Below are positions 22,252 to 33,600 of a stretch of DNA of 64,000 bases, piece after piece; position 1 is the stretch's first letter; each line of letters starts with the position of its first letter. The position numbers and the translations under genes were made by a program. Location of the stretch: NCBI RefSeq assembly GCF_000142905.1, contig NW_013657666.1, positions 493,937 through 557,936 of the forward strand, given 5' to 3'. The notes under the pieces are model-generated. The model had not been told where the DNA came from, searched no databases, and saw only the letters and a program-made list of their open reading frames with translations. Source of the DNA: Thecamonas trahens ATCC 50062. Its lineage: Eukaryota > Protista > Apusomonadida.

Positions 22252-24114
22252 ATGAGCAGGATAGTGATGTGCTCTCGGAGTGCATGGCTTTTTCTAGCGC
22301 TTTCACTTCTTCTATTCTGTGTTACAGCTGTCTATGGTGCTGGTCACCTCGGCGGCGGTGGTGAGCCGGCGCCCAACGTGGTCGTCCTCGTGGCGGCAGA
22401 CATGGGCATGGAAGACGTCAGGGCGACCCGCTCTGTGCTCTTCTCACAAGGTGGAGATGATGGGAAGGTGGTCCACGGCCAGGGTACTGATGAGGGTAAT
22501 GATGATGATGACGGCATCCATGATGATGATGATGGTCGTCATGTCAATGATCCTCGTCGTGATCATGTTCGTGATGATGGGCATGATGGCGGTGAATCGG
22601 AAGGTCATGGCCAAGTTGGAGGTATCGACAAGCTCGCGCGGCGGGGACGGGTGCTGGAGCACATGGTGGCGGCAGGAGCGCTGGCTACGCCGGCACGGGC
22701 CGGACTGCTCACTGGTAGCTACCCGGTGCGGCTGGGCATGGCGTCGTCAGCGGACACCTTCCGCACGTTCTACTCGCCTGGTCAAGTGGGAGGCCTCCCA
22801 CACGGCACGGTGACGCTTGCAGATGAGCTGCTTGCGCTTGGATACGCCACAGCGGCGGTGGGGACGTGGCATCTGGGGATGTCGGACGCGTCGGCTTGGT
22901 CGCCGAACGGGGCGCATCTTCCACTGGCGCACGGCTTTGAGTCGTACTACGGCATGCCGGTCTCGCACGCGCTGACGTGTGCCGGTGACGGGCTGGGGCG
23001 TGATGCGCCGCGCGATGCGGTCTATATCCTCTTTCTTACCTATCATGTGTGGATCTCGCTGGTCTGCCTCCTCGGTGCGGCCTACACGCTTGGCGCCATC
23101 GGAAGCGTCGGCTTCAAGTTTGGGCTCATGTACGTAGCGGCGGCGATGGGTGGGGTGTACTTGTACGCGGTCTCGTTTTCGGTTCTCAATCCTGCAGCAT
23201 GTGTCCTGTTCCGCGACAACGAGCTTGTGGAGCAGCCTGTGGTGCTGGCGAACCTCACGTCGAGGCTTGTGCAGGAGGCGACGCAGTTTATCGGCGGCGC
23301 TGCGGCGTCGCCGCAACCTTTTTTCCTCTACTTTGCGCTGCCCGAGGCTGACCTGGCGTCGGTGGACGGGGCAGTAGCGGCAGTGGTGGATGCGCTCGAC
23401 GCCGCAGGCGTCTTCGACAACACACTTGTGATCTTTACCTCGGACAACGGGCCCCATCTCGAGCGCGCCACTGCACACGGCCGCGCCCAGGACGGACGCC
23501 AGCTGCGTGGCGGCAAGGGCCAAGTCTGGGACGGTGGTTTCCGGGTGCCTGGCATCATTTCCTGGCCGCACCACATCGAAGGAGGCACGGTGTCGACGCA
23601 CCCAGCGTCACACCTCGACATTGTACCGACGGTTCTTGATGCGGTGCACGGAGTCGGCCGCGGACTGGCAGCTCGGATTGGTCGGAGCCAGCTTGACGGC
23701 GTCTCGCTCGTCGATGCGGCTACCACAAGCCCCGACCGTCCTCTCTTCCACTATTGCGGCGACCAGCTTGCCGCTGTCCGGCTCGGCCGGCGCCATAAGG
23801 TCGTCTACGAGTCGCCGGTGCCCGACGCAGGGACCCAGGCGTGCGCATCGACCTTTGTGTGTGGTTGCCACGGAACGGTCCACGATCCGCCGCTTGTTTT
23901 TGACCTTGCTGCCGATCCATCCGAGAGCGCACCGCTCGCCCCAAGCGACGTTGCAGTTGCCGCAGTCCTTGCTTCTGCTGCTGATGCCGTCCACACACAC
24001 CAGGCTACAGTAAGCAACGTCCCGAACCAGCTCGAGACCATTGCTCGGCCGTGGCTCTTTCCCTGCTGTGACTGGCCCAAATGCCACTGTCTGGAGGCTC
24101 GGACTGCGACATAA
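22252..24114 (+). CDS. Steryl-sulfatase/arylsulfatase-like membrane protein, probably catalytically inactive
   Basis: Signal peptide, PNVVVLVAADMG, TPARAGLLTGSYP, WHLG, HGFESYYGMP, two-TM hairpin, FTSDNG, LRGGKG..WDGGFRVPGI..WP, LFHYC, HDPPLVFDL..DPSE, Cys-rich C-terminus (PCCDWPKCHC). Confidence 0.9.
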   Translation: MSRIVMCSRSAWLFLALSLLLFCVTAVYGAGHLGGGGEPAPNVVVLVAADMGMEDVRATRSVLFSQGGDDGKVVHGQGTDEGNDDDDGIHDDDDGRHVNDPRRDHVRDDGHDGGESEGHGQVGGIDKLARRGRVLEHMVAAGALATPARAGLLTGSYPVRLGMASSADTFRTFYSPGQVGGLPHGTVTLADELLALGYATAAVGTWHLGMSDASAWSPNGAHLPLAHGFESYYGMPVSHALTCAGDGLGRDAPRDAVYILFLTYHVWISLVCLLGAAYTLGAIGSVGFKFGLMYVAAAMGGVYLYAVSFSVLNPAACVLFRDNELVEQPVVLANLTSRLVQEATQFIGGAAASPQPFFLYFALPEADLASVDGAVAAVVDALDAAGVFDNTLVIFTSDNGPHLERATAHGRAQDGRQLRGGKGQVWDGGFRVPGIISWPHHIEGGTVSTHPASHLDIVPTVLDAVHGVGRGLAARIGRSQLDGVSLVDAATTSPDRPLFHYCGDQLAAVRLGRRHKVVYESPVPDAGTQACASTFVCGCHGTVHDPPLVFDLAADPSESAPLAPSDVAVAAVLASAADAVHTHQATVSNVPNQLETIARPWLFPCCDWPKCHCLEARTAT

Positions 24115-24303
24115 ATGATGCATACCCGTGCAGATTACTGTGGATGACCAGAGCCATCATCGCAAGCAGCGTGTGTTGACCGTGAGCAGGAACATGGCGA
24201 TATGCCGAGCTTCGGCCTCTGTCCGAGTCAGTGCCGGCGCGCGGCCTTTGCTGCCGCTCGCGCAAACTCGACGGCCACCTCACTTTGTGCCGTTCTCGAC
24301 GCC

Positions 24304-25935
24304 ATGAGTGCCAACTTTCGTGAACAGGGCATAGCCATTGTGAAGCGGGCAGTAGAGATGGATCATGCCGAGCGCTATGCGGTAGGTGGCTCTTCGCATC
24401 TGGTTAGCCGAGTCAGCGGCATGCTCTGGTCATGTCTCAGCAAGTTGTTCGACGCGCTATTCCATTCTCTCGTCACTATCCATACTTCCGCACATGCGAG
24501 TTTTGATTGGCCTCCATACACGCAGCGTTTTTTCTTGGTTGCTTTCGTCGCGGCGAGAGAGATAACCATGCTCTAGATGGCTACAAGTGCGGTCAATTGT
24601 GATCCAGATGTGTGCGAGGCAAACTCACGAGTGAAAGTTGGATGGAGGTGAATGTAGGAGGCGTATTCGTTGTACACGCGGGCGCTCGAGTACTTTACCA
24701 CCTATCTCAAGTACGAAAAGTCGCCGTCGATGCGGGATGCTGTCCGTGGCAAGGTCATCGAGTACCTGGAGCGTGCGGAGCAGCTGAAGACACATCTGGA
24801 TGACGAGGGCAGAGCAGGTGTGGCGGTCGCAGGTGGCGGAGAGAGCAGCGGAGATGCTGGCGGCAGTGGTGCGACGGGCGCGTCGTCGTCGGCGGGGCCG
24901 GCAGCGTGCAGCGGCGTATCCCGGCGGCGGAGCCGCGACGAGCTGCTCGAGTATTTGGGTGGCGAGACGCTGGCAAACGTGTTGCATCGGCGGGTGGTGG
25001 GCCAGGACACAGCGGTTGACGGGGTGGCTCGCGGCATCATGCGGTACTACGAGGGCTGGCGGATGGGCGAATCGCCTATGGTGTTTCTGTTTGTGGGCCC
25101 GTCGGGGGTGGGCAAGACCGAGCTAGCCAAGGCGATTGCCGAGGCTTGTCTCGGCGACGCCTCGGCGGTACTGCGGGTCGACATGGGCGAGTATCAGGAG
25201 CGGCACTCGGTTGCCAAGCTGCTTGGCGCACCGTCGGGTTATGTCGGCAGCTCGGAAGGCACGTATTTTGCAGAGGAGTTGCGGGCGAATCCGGCGACAG
25301 TGGTGCTCCTCGACGAGGTGGAGAAGGCGCACCCAGACGTTCTGACCGTCATGCTCTCTGTCTTTGACGAGGGCCGGTTCACGCCGTCAAAGGGCGGGAC
25401 GGTGTACGCGTCGGACGCGATCTTCATCATGACGTCCAACCTCGGCGCCGACGTCATCACGGGCATGGCCGACGGCTCGCCGAGCCTCGCGACGTACAAC
25501 AGGGCACTCGAGCCGATTCTCAAGGCGCACTTTAAGCGCGACGAGTTTCTGGGACGCATCGACGACATTCTGCCGTTTGAGCCGTTTACGCCGCAGGACC
25601 TGGCATCGGTCATCAACCTCTTCCTCGCCAAGTGGGTCCACCTCGCCGCAAGCCGGCACGGGCTGGACCTCACGTTTGACGCTGCGGTGGTAGATGCGGT
25701 GATGGCGCAGTACAATCCCAAGTACGGGGTGCGGTCGGTCAAGCACATCATCGAGCGCGAGGTCGGCAACACGCTCGCCGACGCCTCGAGCGCAGGCCTC
25801 CTTACCCGTGGGGTGGCGGCGCAGGTGACGGTGGGCGACGCAGGCAACCTGGTGGTTGAACTCATCGACACACCGCGCCGCGAGTCGGGCAGCGAGCCGG
25901 TGAGCCAGAGCGCGGCGGCGATTCTTGCTGTGTAG
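24304..25935 (+). CDS. MIT domain (Vps4-like) fused to a Skd3/CLPB-type AAA+ ATPase domain; two exons, 24304..24381 and 24658..25935
   Basis: The GT-AG intron 24382..24657 joins MSANFREQGIAIVKRAVEMDHAERYA to EAYSLYTRALEYF..KYEK..EYLERAEQLK. AAA motifs: VVGQ, GPSGVGKTELAK, GYVG, LLDEVEKAHPDV, IFIMTSN, PILKAHFKRDEFLGRID, YGVRSVKH. Confidence 0.9.
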
Positions 25936-25950
25936 CGACCGACGAGGAAG

Positions 25951-26784
25951 CTACAGGGCAAGGATGTCGTCCGAGGTGGCGACGATGGAGAACATGGCGT
26001 CCGAGACCCGGGCCTGCGGGAGGGCGCGGACAACGGCAAGCTGCAGAAAAGTGACGAGGGTAGCAGCCATGTAGTAGATGCCGACCGAGACCGGATCGGT
26101 CACCCACATGTTCGAGGGGACCATGTCAAAGGCCAGACCCATGGCGAAGAAGAACGAGATGATAAAGACCATGCGGGTGTAGTGCTGGGCGAGGAGGCCT
26201 TCATCGTCGGCATGCAGCCGATCGCCGTAGAGATAGAGGACGTAGCCGATGCCAGAGTTGGCAACCAGTAGGGCGAGGAGCAAGATCGAGTTGACCACTA
26301 CTGTTGCGGTCTCTAGCCTGGACCTTGCAGCAGCAAGAGAGCCGGCGGGCATGACCACAAAGACCAAGATGATATGCAAGGTAGCGACAAGAATGACGCC
26401 CAGAACAGCGATCATGCTCGAAGCGGAACGAGAGAGTAGAGCCACCGGAGTAGCAGCAGCAGCTTGAAACACAGCAGCCCATTGAGCCACAAGCATGACG
26501 AGAGCAGCAGCCGATGCAGCGGCGAGTAGAGCGGTGACGACGATGAGACCAGGATTTCCAAGACCATGACCAGCAGGATGATCATCATCATAACCAGTGG
26601 CACCAAAAGACAACATAAAGGTCCGAGTCAAAGATGCAAAGACAATGGTGAGCAAGTACGACTTGATGGTACTCCACCTCCTTCCACGGACAAAGGCAAA
26701 GTAGAGCCAAGAGAGTCCGCCGAGGAACAACAAGCCATTGCAGATGCAGAGGGCAATGACCACGTAATAGAAGGTAAACTCCAT
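25951..26784 (-). CDS. Seven-transmembrane protein, possibly THH1/TOM1/TOM3 (GPR137-like) family
   Basis: Seven hydrophobic segments; TM2 Arg (LTRTF), TM3 end LVAQWAAVF and TM5 end LYLYGDRL resemble that family. Confidence 0.6.
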   Translation of the reverse strand: MEFTFYYVVIALCICNGLLFLGGLSWLYFAFVRGRRWSTIKSYLLTIVFASLTRTFMLSFGATGYDDDHPAGHGLGNPGLIVVTALLAAASAAALVMLVAQWAAVFQAAAATPVALLSRSASSMIAVLGVILVATLHIILVFVVMPAGSLAAARSRLETATVVVNSILLLALLVANSGIGYVLYLYGDRLHADDEGLLAQHYTRMVFIISFFFAMGLAFDMVPSNMWVTDPVSVGIYYMAATLVTFLQLAVVRALPQARVSDAMFSIVATSDDILAL

Positions 26785-27505
26785 GAGTGGGTGGGAGGGA
26801 TGTGTGCGTGTGTGTGTGTGTGTGAGGGGTGTGTGTGTGTGTGTGGTGGTGTGTGTGGTGGTGGTGTGTGTGGTGGTGGTGGTGGTGGGTGGGTGGGTGG
26901 GTGGAAGGCGGGGTCAGTGGGCGGAGTCAGTCGGTGGGCGGAGTCGGTCGGTGGGCGGAGTCGGTGAGCGGGTGGGTTTGGGCTGTGGGTGGAGTCGGTC
27001 GGTGGGCGGAGTCGAACGGGTTCGGTGGCTGGTTGGCTGGTTGGTTGGTTGGGGGGTATTGCCTGAGATGCGATAGGTATCGGGTTGGTGTTGGTCTTTG
27101 CCATCGTGTTGAATGGGGTGAAGGGGGGAGATGGGATCGGTTGTGATAGAGGCGACCAGGGGAGGGAGGGGGGGGGGCGGATGAGGTACGCGAGGAGGTC
27201 AGAATATTGATAGTTGATGAGATGGCTGGCTTTGGAAGCGATAGAGAAGATTAAAGCGACTGTGATGGTAAACTCAGCCGAGGGCCATGTGGTGGTGTGG
27301 CCATGACTTTGCTCAGGTCTCCTCCACCCGCCACGCAGTCACCCCGTGGTCCTGACCCGATCCCTGCCACCTCACCCTCCTCCCCTCCTCAGTGTCGAGT
27401 GGTGGGCGGCGTTGCTTTCATGAAACCCCACCCCATATTGAGCGGGCTCTGCTCTCTCCTTATAGAGAGAAGATTGCGGGCCCTCTTTCCCTACCCCCCC
27501 CCCCC

Positions 27506-27605
27506 NNNNNNNNNNNNNNNNNNNNNNNNNNNNNNNNNNNNNNNNNNNNNNNNNNNNNNNNNNNNNNNNNNNNNNNNNNNNNNNNNNNNNNNNNNNNNNN
27601 NNNNN
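27506..27605. other. Assembly gap (100 N)
   Basis: Run of N flanked by poly-C. Confidence 1.
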
Positions 27606-27638
27606 CCCCCCCCTCCCACACACAGTCCAGCTATTGAC

Positions 27639-30600
27639 ATGCTGGGTTCACTAGCGTCCTCGCTCTTCACCCGAGCACTTGGGGAGTACTTTGAATCCCA
27701 CTCACTGGCATCTGTTGGCCTCCGCGACTCTTCTGTCCACTTTACCGATGTGGTCCTCGCACCTGCTGTCATTGACTCGCTCGGCCTGCCTTTGGCGCTC
27801 TTTCACGGCACAGCCAAATCGCTCACCTTTACCGCTCCGCTAAAGAAGCTCAACTCGTCGCCGGCTTCGCTTGTCATGTCAGACATTGCTATTGTTCTCG
27901 TTCCGCCGGGTTGGGATCTTGCTCGCGCCCATGCCGCAAAGATCAGAGCTTTAGAGTCGCTAGAGGCTCGCAAGGCTGCCATCGCCTCGCGCCCGGATTC
28001 GCCTTCATCAGACTCGCCCGCAGCCGCCGCGTCGCCAACTGCCGCCGCCTCCTCATCGGCGCCCGAGACCGAGTCCAAGTCGTCACGCCTCCTCGCCTCT
28101 GTTGTCTCGAACATGTCGCTCGAGCTGAACAATGTCCACGTCCGCATCGAGCTTGATTCCGCTTCCGCAGCCGCCGCACCCGTCGCACTCGGCTTTACCT
28201 GTGAGCGCCTCACTGTCGACACCACCGACGCCGACTTTCAGACCGCCTTTGTCAAGGCCGTCCTTCCCTTTGTCTACCGCTCTGCGGCTCTTGCCGGCTT
28301 CTCCATCTACGCCGGCGTCGTCGCCCCGGCGTCCCTCGTCTCCCGCCATCCCGTTCCTCACTTTGCCAAGCACATGGCTGCCGCCGCTGAGGCCGCGCCA
28401 CGTGATGTTCTCCTCCTCCCTACGTCAGCATCTGCCCGGCTCCAGCAGCCGCGCTCACCAACCGACCTTCTCACCCTCGCCCTCGACCTCGATGCCCTCT
28501 CTGCTTCGGTCTCGCCACACGCCCTCGCGGCGCTCTCCCGCTTGCGCGACGCGCTCCTTGCCCCGCGGGCCCCAGCGCCACACCTCGCCCACCGCCCGCG
28601 CGTCCCCGTCCTCGCAGACCCGCTTGCCTGGTTTCGCTACGCCGCCACCGCCGTCCTCGCTCAGGTCCACGACCGCGCCTCACGTCGCACCCCGCGCTAC
28701 CTCGCCGCCCGCCGCAAGGCGCGTCTCGCTTACATGAATCTTTGGCAGGAGATCCTCACCTCCAAGGATGGCAAGCTCAAGCGCAAGGCCGACGCCGCAG
28801 CTCTCGACACCCTAGAGCACGAGCTCTCCTTTGACGACATCCGCCTCTTCCGCATCATGGCTGAAATATCCCTGGCAAAGTCCAATGCCCTCGCCCTTCG
28901 CTTCCCCAACGCGCCCGCTGCCCTCCGTCTCGCAGGCAAGCGCTCCCGCAAGACCTCAGTTGCCTCCCGCATGATGCGCGTCTTCCGCAAGCCACCGCCT
29001 GCCCCGGCTGTCGCCCCGCCGCCTGCTTCCGGAAAGGCGACCATCTCGCAGCAGCCCAAGTCGCTCGGCTCGCTCGACGACTGGCTCACAGAAGACCAGT
29101 GGGCCGAGTTGTATGCTGCCCTCGCCTGTGACGCTGCGTCTGACCTGACCGAGTCTTCACCGGCATCCACCCCGCGTACATCTGCCACAGCCACGCCCGA
29201 CGACGCCGCCCTATCCACCCGTCTCTCGCTCTCGGTCGGCCTCCTTCGCGTCGCCGTTATCGACGCCGCCGGTTCTCGCCTTGCCACCCTCGCCTCGGGC
29301 GCCCTCTCTACCTCGTACACCTCCACCCTTGGTGGCTCGTTTCACGTAGATGCCGCCCTCTCGCGCCTCAAAGCCTTTGACCACACCCAAACCGACGGCA
29401 AGCGCAAGCTCGTTCTTGGCCCGCGATTTGCCTCTCGCGGCGCAGCTGCAGATACCCCAGACTTTGCTCTCACCTACGCCGGGCATGCGTCCGACAGCGG
29501 GACCGCCTCCGGAGACGTCGCCACCTCGATCGCCATCCGTGCAGCCCCGCTCCTCGCCCATGCCTCGCTCCCGCTCGCCCACGCCGTCACTCACGCCTTT
29601 GCGCATCCGGCAGACACTCGCGCCGCAGACTCGTGGGAGCATCTTTACGCCCGCTACGGTGACTCGTGGCACCTCTTTGCGCGCGAGATCACGGCGCAGC
29701 TCAACCAAGCGCTTGCCCCGGCCTCCTCTCCGCGCGACCTCAGCCTCGACGTCGGCGACTCGCGCCTCGTCTTTGATCTGCCCGGCTCCGGCGAGGCGCT
29801 CGTCCTCGATTTTGGCTCGGTCACCTGCGTCCGCCCATCAACGACATCGGTTTTGCCACCGCCCCCTCCCTGCCTTCCCGCCTCTTGCGCACCGGCAGAT
29901 GGAGAGCCGCCCTCAGGCGCCGCAGTCGAGTCCATGGTCGCTGCATCTGCCTCGGCCTACGACCACTTTGCGCTCGCCCTCTCCGGCGCCACCATCTGGA
30001 TGTCGACCGGCTCGCTCGCGTCGGGGGCGAGACAGCTCCGCCGCCGGACGCGCACATCCTCCTGCCGGCCCTCACGCTCCCATTCACGCTCCACTGGGCT
30101 CGCGCCAAGCCGGACCCGTCTCTCCCAAGCCTCTTCCTGGCCGGCCACTTTACATCGCCCATCACGCTCCACATCTCCGACGCCTCGCTCGGCCAGCTCA
30201 TCCGGCTCGGCACCGCATGGGCAGACGTGGGCTCGGCAGCGCCGCCGCCACCGCCAACTGCGCCGCCGTCGCCGGCCGCGCTCGCCCAAGCTTCGTCTGA
30301 AGCCGAGCTCTTGCCGACCGCTGTCCGCTCACTCTCGTCCGATACTCTTGCACTCCTTGTTCCGTCCACTCTGCTGGCTGCCCGCGTCACCTTCGCATCA
30401 CTTGCTGTCGAGCTTCACTCTGCCCGCGAGGATGCGCCGCCGCTACTTGTCCTCACCGCCAACGGCATCGATCTTCAGCGGACCGGCCGCATGTTCGACA
30501 CCAGGACTTCGGCGAGTCTCACCAGCGGCGTCGCGCTCCACTTTGCCGATCGTCGCAAGCCCGTCATCCATATTTCATCTCTGGCCTACTCTGCCCTCGC

Positions 30601-33600
30601 CGTCTCGCCGCTCTCGCCCCTGCACGCCTCGCCACGCTCCGGCCCGCTTTTCACCAAATCTGTCCACGTCGGTGACATTGCTCTCGACCTGCTACCGCCG
30701 GCTGTCGATGCCGTCCTCCTATGGCTATCGCACGTCGTCGCTGGCTCTGGTCCGCCAGGAAGCTCGGGTCCGCCCCTTGCCCAGGGCTCGCTGTCTGCCA
30801 CCGCCTCGTCCTCGCTAGCCCAGGTTCACGGCAGGTACTCACTCGCCCTCTACGGCGCCGCAATCACCGTCGTCACCGCAGCAGCAGACGATAGGCCACT
30901 GGCGACTGCTTCTGTGCCGGCCTGGCGCATCACCAGCATGACTACCCGTGACTTGTCCGAGCTCCTTGTCGAGCTTGACGACCTGGCTCTTACCGACGCC
31001 ACTACCCCACACGCCCGCTACGCCACCATTCTTGCCGCGCCGGAGCAAGACTCCAAGCTCGTATCTATATCGGTGCACGAGTCGACCACCGCTGCCGTCG
31101 TGGACGTCGCCATTGCCCCACTCGAGCTGATTGTGCTCGGCTCCTCGCTAGCGATGCTGGGCAAGGTTGCCGAGTATGCCGCCACTGCCGGCGCTGAACT
31201 TGCCCTCTGTGCCGACGGCTTTGGACGCGGCCGTCTTGACCGTCTCACCCCATCTGCCCTCGAGGAGTGGTCCGCCCGTCTGCAGGCTCTCGACCTCAGC
31301 TACGCCCTCTCGACCGGCGCCGCAAGGATCGTCGTCCCAGCTGCTGCCGCCGGCCCGCACGTCTTTATCGCTTCCGCCACCCGTATCAAAGCAAGATCTG
31401 GCGCGGTAGGCGCTCCTGGCTTTCAACTCACTGTTGCCGACGCCAGCATCAGTACGGGCCGCCACGGCGCGCTCTCTGGCCTTGCTGACAGGCTCATCGT
31501 CCTACCGGTCGACATTGTGGTCTTGCAGCAGGAGAAGCTCAAGCTGTGGGAGCTGGCCTGGGCCCACTCTGTCACTGCCCAGCTTGGCCCCGACGACATC
31601 GAACTCCTCACAACTCTTCTCACCGCCGAGAGCGGCAACATGCGCGACATCGGGCCGTTGCTCGACCTCGCCTCGCCGACCGCACACCCGCCGGCACCTG
31701 CACTGGAAGCTACTCCTTCTTACCGGGATGGCCCTGTGAGCTTGGCCTTTGAGCTCGCATTGCGGCTTCCAGGCGCATCGCTGCACCTTGCTGACGCTGC
31801 CGGTATCGAGCTTTTCCGCGTCAAAGCTGGCGAGCTGTCCCTAGATCTCTCCCGATACTCGGACGGTCTCGTTTCTGCGAACGCTGCTCTAGCCGCAGCC
31901 TCGCTCGGCGACACCACCACTCCGTCGCATCGCTTGCATCCGGCACACGCCCAGGCTGCCGGTGTGTGTGCTGTCAGAGTGCAACTCACCACAGGCGGGC
32001 CTGACCTCGCGCTCAGCGTAGTGCTCAGCCTCGATGGGCTCACGGTGTACCCACTCCACCCCGTCTGGGAGCAGGTGGCGACGCTGGTGCCGACTAGCAC
32101 GTCGTCGTCGCCGGCTGACTGCCCTGGCTCACCATCGCGCGCCTCACTTCTCGAGGCCATTGAGGCCCGCGCCGCGCGGATGAGCATCAGTGCCACACTC
32201 TGTGATCTACAGCTGCTCTTTCTCGGCCAGCCGGCGTCGCATGTCTCTGACACCGTTGCAGTCCTCCTCGACGTACTCGACACTAGCTACGCGCACAACG
32301 CGCGGCGGGCACAGACAAGTGCGTTTGCTTCGTTCAAGCACTGTCAAGTTGTTCGGTGTGTAGCTGCGGCTGCCAAGCGAAGCACCATCCTTGCGCCCGC
32401 CACGCTCGAGTTGCACCTGGCATCGGCAGGCACAGAGCCGCTTGACCTCGACGTCGACATCTCTGCGCTGAGCATCGACATCTCTGCGCGAGACCTTGTC
32501 CTCGTTCGCGCTATTCTGGAACAATTGCCACCGTCAGATGATGTAGGCGCCATTGCTGTCGAGGAGACACCGGCTCTGACAGGACCAGCGCGGCTCCAGG
32601 CGCAGCTGCGGCGGTCGCTGCATTTGCTGAGCCGACTCGCCCGCGGGCGCGCGGGAAGCGAGCAGCTGTCGGTGACTGCCAAGGCGATACAGGTCCTTGT
32701 GGTCGATGATCGAGGGGAATGTCTTGCGACGCCAGTCGGTCGAAGCGGGCTCTCCGCCGTCGAGCTGCAGCTGGCTGGCTGGAGCGATGATGCGACTGCA
32801 AACGGTGTCGTCACTTTTGAGCTCAGCGCCGATGTGTACAACACCGAGACGGTGGCGTGGGAGCCACTCGTCGAACCCTGGACTGCGTTTGCCAAGCTCG
32901 TGACGGGATGCGTCGTCGAGGCCGGCTCGACCCGGTGCCTCAACATCAACGCCACCCCACGCGCTGTCGGTGTACTCCTGTCCGGAGTGGCACTGATCGA
33001 GGCCCGGTCAGCGGGCGGCCGCAAGGTGGGATGGGCGGCAGCAGCGGCGGCCGCTGCCGCGGCCGATGTCGACTCGCCGTCGCTCAATGCCATGCCATAT
33101 CGGTTGGTTAACGAGACTGGCGAGCCGCTCACGCTCTCGTACGCCATCGATGCCGAGGAGTCGCTACCGGTGGAGACGACTTCAGTTCGCCGCGGCGATG
33201 TGGTCGGCTTTGCGCTGGAGACACCCGGCCGGGCCGCGCGGCGCGACGGCGACGCGCACCACGACGTCCACATTCAAATCCGCGGCTACCAGCCGGGTAT
33301 CCATGTCGACGTCGACGCAGTCGGCGCGGCAGCCTACGCTGTGGTGTGCACCGAGACCGGCGCTGCACGACAGGTTGTTGTCGCAGTTGCCATGGCTCAT
33401 CGGTGCAAGGTTCTCCGCATCGGCTCGGGCCTCGCGGTTGCCAATAACTGCACCGAGCCGCTAGCGATTCGCGAGGCTGGCACTGAGGGTGACGGGTGGC
33501 AGTTGCCGGCTGGTGACCGCATCCCAATCCCACTCGCTGCGGCACAGTCGGCGTTTGAGGTGGCACTCCCGCATTGCGCGTGGTCGACCTCGGTCATCGA

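What the first reader, a model, noticed from the sequence alone, without database searches (positions are those of the whole stretch)
24304..25935. MIT-Skd3 chimera: Vps4-type ESCRT-III-binding domain on a CLPB/Skd3-type disaggregase motor
Seen: a hidden first exon completes a Vps4-like MIT three-helix domain, followed by a Gly/Ser linker and one HCLR-clade AAA+ domain. Walker A/B, the GYVG pore loop, sensor-1, the Arg finger and sensor-2 (YGVR) are intact. Segments YQERHSVAK, KAHPDVLTVML, DAIFIMTSN, PILKAHFKRDEFLGRI and YNPKYGVRSVKH resemble human mitochondrial CLPB/Skd3 rather than Vps4 or bacterial ClpB. Established: Skd3 normally has a mitochondrial presequence plus ankyrin repeats, and MIT domains normally sit on meiotic-clade AAAs (Vps4, spastin, katanin) and bind ESCRT-III MIMs. 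Inference: this is a cytosolic unfoldase targeted to ESCRT-III or MIM-bearing substrates, either a convergent Vps4 analogue or a membrane-repair-coupled disaggregase. I do not know this architecture from the literature.
Basis: partly seen in the sequence, partly recalled or inferred. Interest (0 to 1): 0.88.

Follow-up and report, generated by a model that had tools for sequence, protein, structure and literature searches.

The report
MIT domain fused to Skd3-type unfoldase
A protist (Thecamonas trahens) expresses a real two-exon gene that joins a Vps4-type MIT targeting domain to a single motor domain related to the human mitochondrial disaggregase Skd3/CLPB; the combination is rare, conserved and not described in the papers searched, and its cellular role is still only inferred.

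Summary
The window is Thecamonas trahens ATCC 50062 and the gene is AMSG_03857. Exon 1 (24304-24381) and exon 2 (24658-25935) are joined at a GT..AG intron, and a cDNA contig crosses that junction. [quoted passage not shown] All catalytic motifs are intact.

The NBD is closest to human Skd3 by sequence (E 1e-75) and by fold (Foldseek E 1.5e-31). In a maximum-likelihood tree it falls in a clade with ankyrin-Skd3 (support 100/100), apart from bacterial ClpB/ClpC D2 domains and from Thecamonas's own two-ring Clp proteins.

The exon is not hidden. The public gene model uses the same junction but starts 34 codons upstream. The cDNA 5' end at about 24277 and the relatives argue for a start at the MIT domain, so probably no mitochondrial presequence.

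Searches of 5.8 and 1.8 billion proteins found this architecture in only five lineages: Thecamonas, a close relative with the same intron position, the amoebozoan Echinamoeba, and two environmental sequences. No paper describing it was found.

Targeting to ESCRT-III is inferred. It rests on conserved MIM-contact positions and on MIM1-bearing ESCRT-III genes in the genome. I class it as a new variant of a known kind.

The parts
24202..24303 (+). In-frame upstream stretch that the public model (485 aa) translates as a 34-residue N-terminal extension. It is probably not translated; 24277-24303 is 5' UTR.
   Evidence: P0001 begins MPSFGLCPSQCRRAAF.... The cDNA contig of run X2 begins at 24277, preceded by non-templated ATCAACGCAGAGTACGGGG, the tail of a template-switch oligo. 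AF2 pLDDT is 36-60 for residues 1-27. Relatives P0004, P0008 and L018 start at the MIT domain.
24304..24381 (+). Coding exon 1: start codon and MIT helix 1 (26 codons).
   Evidence: Translation. Matches MIT profile positions 3-21. The only PDB matches are helix 1 of MIT domains, at weak E of 0.7-1.3 for 26 residues. Present in the cDNA contig.
24382..24657 (+). Intron, 276 bases, GT..AG, phase 0.
   Evidence: The joint skips 276 bases in the X2 contig. The same intron position occurs in the relative's contig L018, where exon 1 (5-79) ends at ...ERFQ and a gt...ag intron precedes EAYTVYMRALEY.
24658..24792 (+). MIT helices 2 and 3 (exon 2, residues 1-45).
   Evidence: Pfam MIT 46.5 bits, profile positions 22-65. 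Aligns without gaps to yeast Vps4 residues 28-77, 27/50 identical, E 2e-12. AF2 helices have pLDDT 88-97.
24793..24942 (+). Low-complexity Gly/Ser/Ala linker.
   Evidence: Sequence. AF2 pLDDT below 50 for P0001 residues 119-145. Variable in length and sequence among family members.
24943..25569 (+). NBD large subdomain (AAA_2). Walker A 25096-25119, pore loop GYVG 25237-25248, Walker B DE 25312-25317, sensor-1 Asn 25438-25440, Arg finger 25555-25557.
   Evidence: AAA_2 E 3e-44. Human Skd3 E 1e-75. Key motif residues invariant across 36 proteins (motif blocks). Foldseek top 12 hits are all Skd3 NBD.
25591..25812 (+). ClpB D2-small (C-terminal alpha/beta subdomain) with the sensor-2 Arg at 25732-25734 (YGVRS).
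   Evidence: PF10431 E 5e-10. Second HMMER stretch to Skd3 residues 420-544. Motif alignment.
25813..25935 (+). Poorly conserved C-terminal tail and stop codon (25933-25935).
   Evidence: AF2 pLDDT below 50 at the end.

Best explanation
AMSG_03857 of Thecamonas trahens encodes a protein of about 451 residues that starts directly with a Vps4-type MIT three-helix domain. A disordered linker of about 50 residues follows, and then a single Skd3/CLPB-type AAA+ module (NBD plus D2-small). It has no first ATPase ring, no M-domain, no ankyrin repeats and probably no mitochondrial presequence.

Shown: the gene structure, the transcript, the domain identities, the intact catalytic and pore-loop residues, the grouping of the NBD with Skd3, and conservation of the whole architecture in apusomonad and amoebozoan lineages.

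Inferred from what is known of Skd3 and Vps4: the NBD assembles into a ring that threads polypeptides through its central pore using the GYVG tyrosine loops and ATP hydrolysis, without Hsp70, as Skd3 does. The six flexibly tethered MIT domains take the place of Skd3's ankyrin domain as the client- or adaptor-binding module. They would recruit the ring in the cytosol to proteins that carry MIT-interacting motifs. The most obvious candidates are the C-terminal tails of ESCRT-III subunits, which would then be unfolded, or would serve as a membrane-bound docking platform.
For: Gene and transcript:
- A cDNA contig spans exon 1, the splice and 454 bases of exon 2, reaching the Walker A motif, with its 5' end at 24277.
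- The public model has the same junction.
- A relative with 61-68% identity has the same intron position on a single contig.
- Full-length transcripts P0004 (Echinamoeba exundans) and P0008 carry the same domains.

Domains:
- Pfam MIT, AAA_2 and D2-small.
- AF2 model with mean pLDDT 84.9, three confident MIT helices and a disordered linker.

NBD affinity:
- Skd3 258 bits against 219 bits for the best ClpB.
- Foldseek top 12 hits are Skd3, TM-score 0.87-0.89.
- The careful ML tree gives MIT-Clp + ANK-Skd3 100/100, with bacterial D2 domains and Thecamonas's own ClpB-like D2 domains on the other side.
- Motifs shared with Skd3 but not with the one bacterial ClpB-type row in that alignment block (P0005): F(K/R)RDEF(L/I)GRI and YG(A/V)RS.
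- This is the only Skd3-type NBD in the genome.

MIT competence:
- Closest to Vps4 MIT domains.
- The yeast Vps4 MIM1-site residue L64 is Leu here, and the MIM2-site residue I18 is Val (roles of the residues from PMC3987140).

Ligands are available: 8 Snf7-family loci, two of which end in canonical MIM1 motifs, DSDLQDRLNNLRR and EDDLTARLAALR.
Against: - No binding, ATPase, disaggregase or localisation data exist for any member.
- MIT domains also bind partners other than ESCRT-III, so the client is not defined.
- Thecamonas keeps a canonical Vps4, so a second ESCRT-III disassembly enzyme is not obviously needed.
- The transcript 5' end rests on one contig from one run of a slightly different strain (3 substitutions). 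The upstream 34 codons are in frame and have a presequence-like composition (Ala/Arg/Ser-rich, one acidic residue). A longer, possibly mitochondrial, isoform is therefore not excluded.
- The family is very rare (five lineages), which suits a specialised or dispensable role.
Confidence: 0.6

Rival explanations
1. General cytosolic stand-alone disaggregase. The MIT domain serves as a generic client, adaptor or oligomerisation module, as the ankyrin domain does in Skd3, with partners unrelated to ESCRT-III. The Vps4 likeness of the MIT reflects its origin, not its present ligand.
For: Skd3's N-terminal domain is needed for activity but is not ESCRT-related (PMC7343390 and PMC9934407, abstracts listed). 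Canonical Vps4 is retained. The MIT is no closer to Thecamonas's own Vps4 MIT (45-56% over two segments) than to yeast Vps4's (54%), so it has diverged independently for a long time.
Against: The MIM1-site Leu and the MIM2-site hydrophobic residue are kept. The RAExLK and YEK signature residues are invariant in the four aligned family members and recur in the fragment P0221, across apusomonads and Amoebozoa. This indicates purifying selection on a Vps4-like ligand groove.
Confidence: 0.25
2. Mitochondrial Skd3 orthologue. Translation starts at the annotated ATG at 24202, the 34-residue extension acts as a presequence, and the protein works inside mitochondria as Skd3 does.
For: The public model uses this start. 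The extension is in frame, rich in Ala, Arg and Ser, and has a single acidic residue at position 33. This is the only Skd3-type NBD in the genome.
Against: The cDNA 5' end with template-switch oligo is at 24277, downstream of that ATG. P0008 has an in-frame stop upstream of its MIT-domain start. P0004 and L018 also begin at the MIT domain. AF2 gives the extension low confidence. Any translated 5' leader in a genome of about 62% GC would be Ala/Arg-rich. No MIM-bearing partner is known inside mitochondria (my own knowledge).
Confidence: 0.1
3. Artefact: two neighbouring genes (a small MIT gene and an AAA gene) merged by annotation or by misassembly.
For: The run that covers the locus contiguously through the intron (X11) may be the assembly's own data.
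Against: One cDNA contig links exon 1 to the start of the NBD. There is one uninterrupted frame from MIT helix 2 to the stop. The same architecture occurs in four other organisms, two of them as full-length transcript-like contigs.
Confidence: 0.02

Closest known systems
Skd3 / CLPB / ANKCLP (human mitochondrial intermembrane-space disaggregase; PDB 7ttr, 7us2, 7xbk)
   Same: A single HCLR-clade NBD homologous to ClpB NBD2, plus a D2-small domain. 43-47% identity. Shared motifs F(K/R)RDEF(L/I)GRI and YG(A/V)RS. Sister clade in the tree (100/100). Best structural match. No NBD1 and no M-domain, so probably independent of Hsp70.
   Different: The N-terminus is a Vps4-type MIT domain plus a disordered linker, in place of a presequence, hydrophobic stretch and ankyrin repeats. 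Probably cytosolic. Lacks the insertion of about 40 residues that human Skd3 has between the two matched stretches. Walker A reads GPSG rather than GSSG, and sensor-2 reads GVR rather than GAR.
Vps4 (ESCRT-III disassembly ATPase, meiotic/classic AAA clade)
   Same: The same overall plan: N-terminal MIT, flexible linker, single-ring AAA+ unfoldase. MIT helices 2-3 are 54% identical to yeast Vps4. The hydrophobic positions of the MIM1 and MIM2 sites are conserved.
   Different: The motor belongs to a different AAA+ clade (AAA_2 / ClpB D2, with sensor-2 and D2-small). There is no Vps4_C, no beta-domain for Vta1, and a GYVG pore loop in place of the Vps4 pore loop. Thecamonas has a separate canonical Vps4 on contig C24, whose MIT intron sits at a different position.
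ClpB / Hsp104 / Hsp78 (two-ring disaggregases)
   Same: The NBD is homologous to their second ring (38-46% identity to bacterial D2 domains). Same catalytic motifs.
   Different: One ring only. No Clp_N, NBD1 or M-domain. Separated from them in the phylogeny. Thecamonas has two such two-ring proteins of its own (L001, L002).

Membership tests
Skd3/CLPB (ANKCLP) | Single NBD homologous to ClpB NBD2, followed by a D2-small C-terminal domain | tested here: met
   AAA_2 E 3e-44 and ClpB_D2-small E 5e-10, with only one NBD. Skd3 is the best PDB hit by sequence and by fold.
Skd3/CLPB (ANKCLP) | NBD groups with Skd3 rather than with ClpB/Hsp78/Hsp104/ClpC D2 domains | tested here: met
   Careful ML tree: MIT-Clp + ANK-Skd3 100/100. 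The MIT-Clp sequences form a sister group (97/79) beside, not inside, the ANK-Skd3 clade (100/99). Limits: no root, no fungal Hsp104, and the bacteria were picked by similarity to the query.
Skd3/CLPB (ANKCLP) | N-terminal ankyrin-repeat domain | tested here: not met
   No ankyrin family among the 27 Pfam matches; MIT instead. Thecamonas has no ANK-linked Skd3 NBD anywhere in its genome.
Skd3/CLPB (ANKCLP) | Mitochondrial presequence and intermembrane-space location | tested here: inconclusive
   The cDNA 5' end at 24277 excludes the upstream ATG in that transcript. Relatives start at the MIT domain. A minor longer isoform is not excluded, and location was not measured.
Skd3/CLPB (ANKCLP) | Hsp70-independent protein disaggregase activity | not testable with these tools
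   Needs recombinant protein and a luciferase or casein assay.
Vps4 / meiotic-clade AAA | N-terminal MIT domain of the Vps4 type | tested here: met
   PF04212 46.5 bits from exon 2 alone, with exon 1 supplying profile positions 3-21. PDB hits with E below 1e-4 are all Vps4. Three confident helices in the AF2 model.
Vps4 / meiotic-clade AAA | Classic-clade AAA domain (PF00004 as best match) with the Vps4_C helix and beta-domain | tested here: not met
   Best family is AAA_2 (151 bits) against AAA PF00004 (35.8 bits). No Vps4_C match. The Vps4_C matches in the genome lie elsewhere.
ClpB/Hsp104/Hsp78 | Two NBDs with a coiled-coil M-domain and a Clp_N domain | tested here: not met
   Only one NBD. 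No Clp_N, and no AAA_lid_9 or M-domain match. Protein length is about 451 residues.
MIT domain (functional MIM binder) | Hydrophobic groove residues that contact MIM1 and MIM2 (yeast Vps4 L64 and I18) | tested here: met
   The equivalent of L64 is Leu and of I18 is Val. Residue roles are from PMC3987140. Actual binding was not tested.

The most novel reading that the evidence does not exclude
The Skd3-type single-ring motor did not arise in holozoans as an ankyrin fusion. It is older, dating at least to the common ancestor of Amoebozoa, apusomonads and opisthokonts, and first worked as a cytosolic, MIT-targeted unfoldase coupled to ESCRT-III. In that case the animal mitochondrial disaggregase Skd3 would derive from an ESCRT-linked enzyme through an N-terminal domain swap (MIT to presequence plus ankyrin) and relocation into mitochondria. 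The Thecamonas protein would be a living representative of the ancestral state, and a second, mechanistically distinct ESCRT-III remodelling ATPase.
Probability: 0.2. Interest if true: 0.85.

Novelty: new variant of a known kind. Interest (0 to 1): 0.6.

Why it matters
1. It is a natural experiment in AAA+ modularity. A Vps4-type targeting domain sits on a motor from a different AAA+ clade and has been conserved across two eukaryotic supergroup-level lineages. This tests directly whether the MIT domain alone specifies ESCRT-III as a client.

2. It changes the history of Skd3/CLPB, a human disease gene (3-methylglutaconic aciduria type VII, severe congenital neutropenia). The papers read here place Skd3's origin in choanoflagellates or stem holozoans (PMC7343390, PMC4339202). 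Here a sister lineage of the NBD occurs in apusomonads and Amoebozoa. Ankyrin-Skd3 itself also turns up in nucleariids, an aphelid and several fungi.

3. The protein is small, single-ring and probably soluble, so it could serve as a tractable model for Skd3-type motors.

Tried and rejected
- Misassembly or merged genes: rejected by the cDNA contig across the junction and by four other organisms with the same architecture.
- NBD derived from the organism's own Hsp78/Hsp104-like genes or from a bacterial ClpB: rejected. Those sequences fall on the other side of a 100/100 branch.
- Recent exon shuffling from the resident Vps4 gene: unlikely. Thecamonas Vps4 MIT is 45-56% identical over two segments, no closer than yeast Vps4, and its MIT intron is at a different position.
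- Search for further family members: a profile of four members run against 5.8 billion clusters, and exhaustively against 1.84 billion representatives, added only the fragment P0221. Matches that seemed to cover the MIT region in 740-880-residue proteins look like ClpB/Hsp104-type proteins aligned through their helical middle region (not checked individually).
- Literature: 'MIT domain' with Skd3 gave 0 papers. 'MIT domain' with ClpB and 'domain architecture' gave 2 unrelated papers. 'MIT domain' with disaggregase gave 7 papers, and none of the six listed is about such a fusion by title or abstract.
- Exon 1 on its own is too short for significance (E 0.02 in Pfam, 0.7-1.3 in PDB). Its support comes from exact continuity with the profile, the cDNA and the homologues.
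- I did not submit my own joined exon 1 + exon 2 model to any search or fold. Searches were made exon by exon, by reference. Full-length steps used the public database protein P0001, which carries the same junction plus the 34-residue extension.
Full report
**Identity of the locus.** The exon-2 translation is 100% identical to 'uncharacterized protein AMSG_03857 [Thecamonas trahens ATCC 50062]' (P0001; KNC47424.1, XP_013759760.1; UniRef A0A0L0D515, auto-named 'vesicle-fusing ATPase'). The window is contig C14:493937-557936 of that 28.7-Mb assembly. Thecamonas is an apusomonad, a free-living flagellate lineage that, by established phylogeny, is sister to animals plus fungi.

**The observation.** The ATG at 24304 opens 26 codons (MSANFREQGIAIVKRAVEMDHAERYA). 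GT follows at 24382. AG at 24656-24657 precedes exon 2, which runs from 24658 to the stop at 25933-25935 (425 codons).
- Pfam places exon 1 on MIT profile positions 3-21. Exon 2 continues at positions 22-65 (46.5 bits, cut-off 30), so the splice reconstitutes the domain to the residue.
- AAA_2 (residues 141-304 of exon 2, E 3e-44) and ClpB_D2-small (312-385, E 5e-10) follow.

**Transcript evidence.** I laid four public runs on 24000-26100.
- Run X2 is on record as probable RNA and carries SMART adaptor sequence. Its 578-base contig lies on 24277-24380 and then on 24657-25111. This is a 276-base skip with GT..AG ends and 104 bases on the short side. MIT helix 1, helices 2-3, the linker and the NBD up to the Walker A motif are therefore on one cDNA.
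- The contig's 5' loose end, ATCAACGCAGAGTACGGGG, does not match the genome (24273-24276 read GGCC). From my own knowledge it is the tail of a template-switch oligo followed by non-templated G's, which marks a cDNA 5' end at about 24277.
- Two subsurface metatranscriptomes (X1, X3) hold contigs of 99-100% identity in exon 2 only.
- X11 holds an unspliced contig that looks genomic.
- X2 differs from the window at three positions, so it comes from a slightly different strain.

**Start codon.**
- The public model (485 aa) uses the same junction but starts at the ATG at 24202. That adds MPSFGLCPSQCRRAAFAAARANSTATSLCAVLDA.
- That ATG lies upstream of the observed cDNA 5' end.
- Among the relatives, P0008 has an in-frame stop (L019:28-30) ahead of its MIT-domain start. 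P0004 is a complete transcript ORF that begins at the MIT domain. The close relative's contig L018 has its ATG at the equivalent position.
- AlphaFold2 gives residues 1-27 of P0001 a pLDDT of 36-60.
- I therefore read the protein as about 451 residues, starting at the MIT domain, without a presequence. This rests on one contig, and the extension has a presequence-like composition, so I keep a mitochondrial isoform as a 0.1 rival.

**The motor.**
- By sequence, the best solved structures are human CLPB/Skd3 (7ttr E 1.1e-75, 258 bits). Next come Thermus ClpB NBD2 (219 bits), ClpC, Hsp104 (about 160-180 bits) and ClpA.
- The AF2 model of P0001 was built on a 36-sequence alignment (mean pLDDT 84.9, NBD above 90). 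Its twelve best Foldseek matches are all Skd3 NBD chains (E 1.5e-31, target TM-score 0.87-0.89, 41-46% identity). ClpC and ClpB D2 domains follow.
- In the genome, the Skd3 of Salpingoeca matches this gene best (262 bits, 51% identity). It then matches two two-ring ClpB/Hsp104-type genes (171 and 157 bits). No ankyrin-linked Skd3 NBD exists.
- The careful IQ-TREE analysis (LG+C20+F+G4, 56 rows, 355 columns) contained six MIT-bearing sequences, 20 ankyrin-Skd3 sequences from animals, a choanoflagellate, Corallochytrium, Nuclearia, Paraphelidium, four fungi and Reticulomyxa, 28 prokaryotic ClpB/ClpC-type sequences (27 D2 domains from genome loci plus the partial protein P0005), and Thecamonas's own two D2 domains.
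- That tree puts MIT-bearing plus ankyrin-Skd3 sequences on one side of a 100/100 branch. Ankyrin-Skd3 forms one group (100/99) and the MIT-bearing sequences another (97/79).
- Limits of the tree: it is unrooted, the prokaryotes were chosen by similarity to the query, no fungal Hsp104 or ClpA/ClpX outgroup was included, and P0008 has a long branch.
- The key residues of Walker A, Walker B, pore loop GY(V/I/L)G, sensor-1 Asn and the Arg finger are invariant across the 36-protein alignment, and the sensor-2 Arg is at least 90% conserved (motif blocks). The motifs F(K/R)RDEF(L/I)GRI and YG(A/V)RS are shared with Skd3 but not with the one bacterial ClpB-type row in that block, P0005.

**The MIT domain.**
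- Helices 2-3 align without gaps to yeast Vps4 residues 28-77 (E 2e-12, 27 of 50 identical by my count). Human VPS4A and VPS4B follow. MITD1 is marginal, and no spastin or katanin MIT appears.
- Exon 1 alone finds only helix 1 of MIT domains, at insignificant E-values.
- In yeast Vps4, L64D interferes with MIM1 binding and I18D with MIM2 binding (PMC3987140). The aligned residues here are Leu and Val. In the other members the L64-equivalent is Met or Ile.
- AF2 predicts three long helices with pLDDT 88-97, followed by a linker with pLDDT below 50.

**Context in the genome.**
- Thecamonas has a canonical Vps4 on contig C24. Its MIT lies at 170410-170529 and 169736-169813, and its Vps4_C at 168647-168829 (89.8 bits).
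- The MIT of that Vps4 is 45-56% identical to the one studied here and is split by an intron at a different profile position. A recent copy from the resident Vps4 is therefore unlikely.
- There are eight Snf7-family (ESCRT-III) loci. Two open frames end in canonical MIM1 motifs, DSDLQDRLNNLRR and EDDLTARLAALR. Potential ligands exist.

**How widespread it is.**
- A single-sequence search and a four-member profile search of about 5.8 billion clusters were run. An exhaustive HMMER pass over 1.84 billion representatives followed.
- Together they found MIT + AAA_2 in only five lineages:
  - Thecamonas trahens.
  - An environmental relative, P0002/P0194/P0195 (ENA ERZ17175005). It is 61-68% identical, GC-rich, and has the same phase-0 intron at the same codon.
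  - Echinamoeba exundans, an amoebozoan (EukProt EP01122).
  - P0008, a full-length transcript-like contig from JGI sample 3300016894. It is sister to Echinamoeba in the tree.
  - P0221, an AT-rich fragment from JGI sample 3300030743.
- Profile scores drop from at least 666 bits for members to about 410 bits for the best ordinary single-NBD ankyrin-Skd3. In between lie only the repeat-containing P0003 (511 bits) and tandem-NBD proteins that score through several stretches.
- The architecture is thus rare but conserved at 38-68% identity across two deep eukaryotic lineages. That argues for function rather than accident.

**Literature.** No held paper combines 'MIT domain' with Skd3. Searches with ClpB or 'disaggregase' returned only Vps4, spastin and general AAA+ papers, judged by title and abstract. 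Cupo and Shorter 2020 state that Skd3 first appears in choanoflagellates (PMC7343390). Erives and Fassler 2015 state that the ANKCLP fusion arose in stem holozoans (PMC4339202). Neither mentions Thecamonas or a MIT form.

**Mechanism.** The steps shown are the architecture, expression, intact catalytic residues and family relationships. The inferred steps are these:
- Ring assembly and ATP-driven threading through GYVG loops, without Hsp70. This follows from homology with Skd3, which lacks the M-domain that couples ClpB and Hsp104 to Hsp70.
- Recruitment through six tethered MIT domains to proteins bearing MIT-interacting motifs, by analogy with Vps4.
- ESCRT-III tails as the most likely partners, because the MIT is of the Vps4 type, keeps the groove residues, and the ligands are encoded in the genome.

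I put about 0.6 on this package as a whole. The architecture itself is above 0.95, unfoldase activity about 0.8, and ESCRT-III as the physiological partner about 0.45. The main rival is a general cytosolic disaggregase whose MIT binds something else (0.25).

**Evolutionary reading.** If the root lies among the prokaryotic sequences, the Skd3-type single-ring motor predates opisthokonts. The gene tree groups apusomonad and amoebozoan MIT forms together against the opisthokont ankyrin forms. That fits either ancient paralogy with differential loss, or orthology with a rate shift on the ankyrin-Skd3 stem. The present sampling cannot decide between them.

**Verdict.** The gene is already annotated, though uncharacterised. 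I class it as a new variant of a known kind and score interest at 0.6.

Noticed in passing
window 24202-24303: The public gene model AMSG_03857 (485 aa) probably starts 34 codons too early. The cDNA 5' end is at about 24277 and the relatives start at the MIT domain. The extension has a presequence-like composition, so it could mislead localisation predictors.
   Followed up: partly
proteins P0112, P0068, P0111, P0128, P0153, P0137, P0088, P0167: Ankyrin-Skd3 proteins are on record from Nuclearia, Paraphelidium, Choanephora, three zoopagomycete fungi (Dispira, Tieghemiomyces, Dimargaris), Corallochytrium and the foraminifer Reticulomyxa. Published statements place Skd3's first appearance in choanoflagellates or stem holozoans. 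In the tree they sit inside the ANK-Skd3 clade. The Reticulomyxa sequence pairs with a fungus, which may mean transfer or contamination.
   Followed up: partly
proteins P0196-P0201 and P0222, P0225, P0226, P0253: Proteins of 700-1120 residues carry two or three tandem AAA_2 + D2-small modules. Giant proteins of 4000-7800 residues carry three such stretches. Both kinds score among the top matches to the MIT-Clp profile. Their origin and function are unknown.
   Followed up: no
protein P0224: A 459-residue protein has an Skd3-like NBD and about 130 N-terminal residues with no Pfam match (neither MIT nor ankyrin). It may be a third kind of N-terminal module on this motor.
   Followed up: no
runs X1, X3, X4: Subsurface metatranscriptomes from 2023 hold contigs 99-100% identical to Thecamonas trahens exon 2. 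This suggests the species, or a very close strain, is active in that habitat.
   Followed up: no
G000:C24:168647-170529 (L104, L106): This is the canonical Thecamonas Vps4. Its MIT domain is split by an intron at profile position 40, not at position 21/22 as in AMSG_03857.
   Followed up: partly
G000:C21:371273-371470 (L101); G000:C12:94196-94693 (L103, L107); G000:C25:232249-232413 (L105): Further MIT-domain loci in the genome. C21 has the best-scoring MIT (63.9 bits). C12 has two MIT matches in one 976-residue frame. C25 has a MIT near a Vps4_C-like match, so it may be another meiotic-clade AAA.
   Followed up: no
window about 27400-27620: A run of N (an assembly gap) lies inside the long open frame at 27297-30818. 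Just upstream, at 26780-27100, there is a GT/GGT-rich low-complexity stretch.
   Followed up: no
L100:1035-1213: The fragment P0221 ends at a stop inside the D2-small region, and a second short frame follows 40 bases later. This looks like an unrecognised intron in an AT-rich organism.
   Followed up: no
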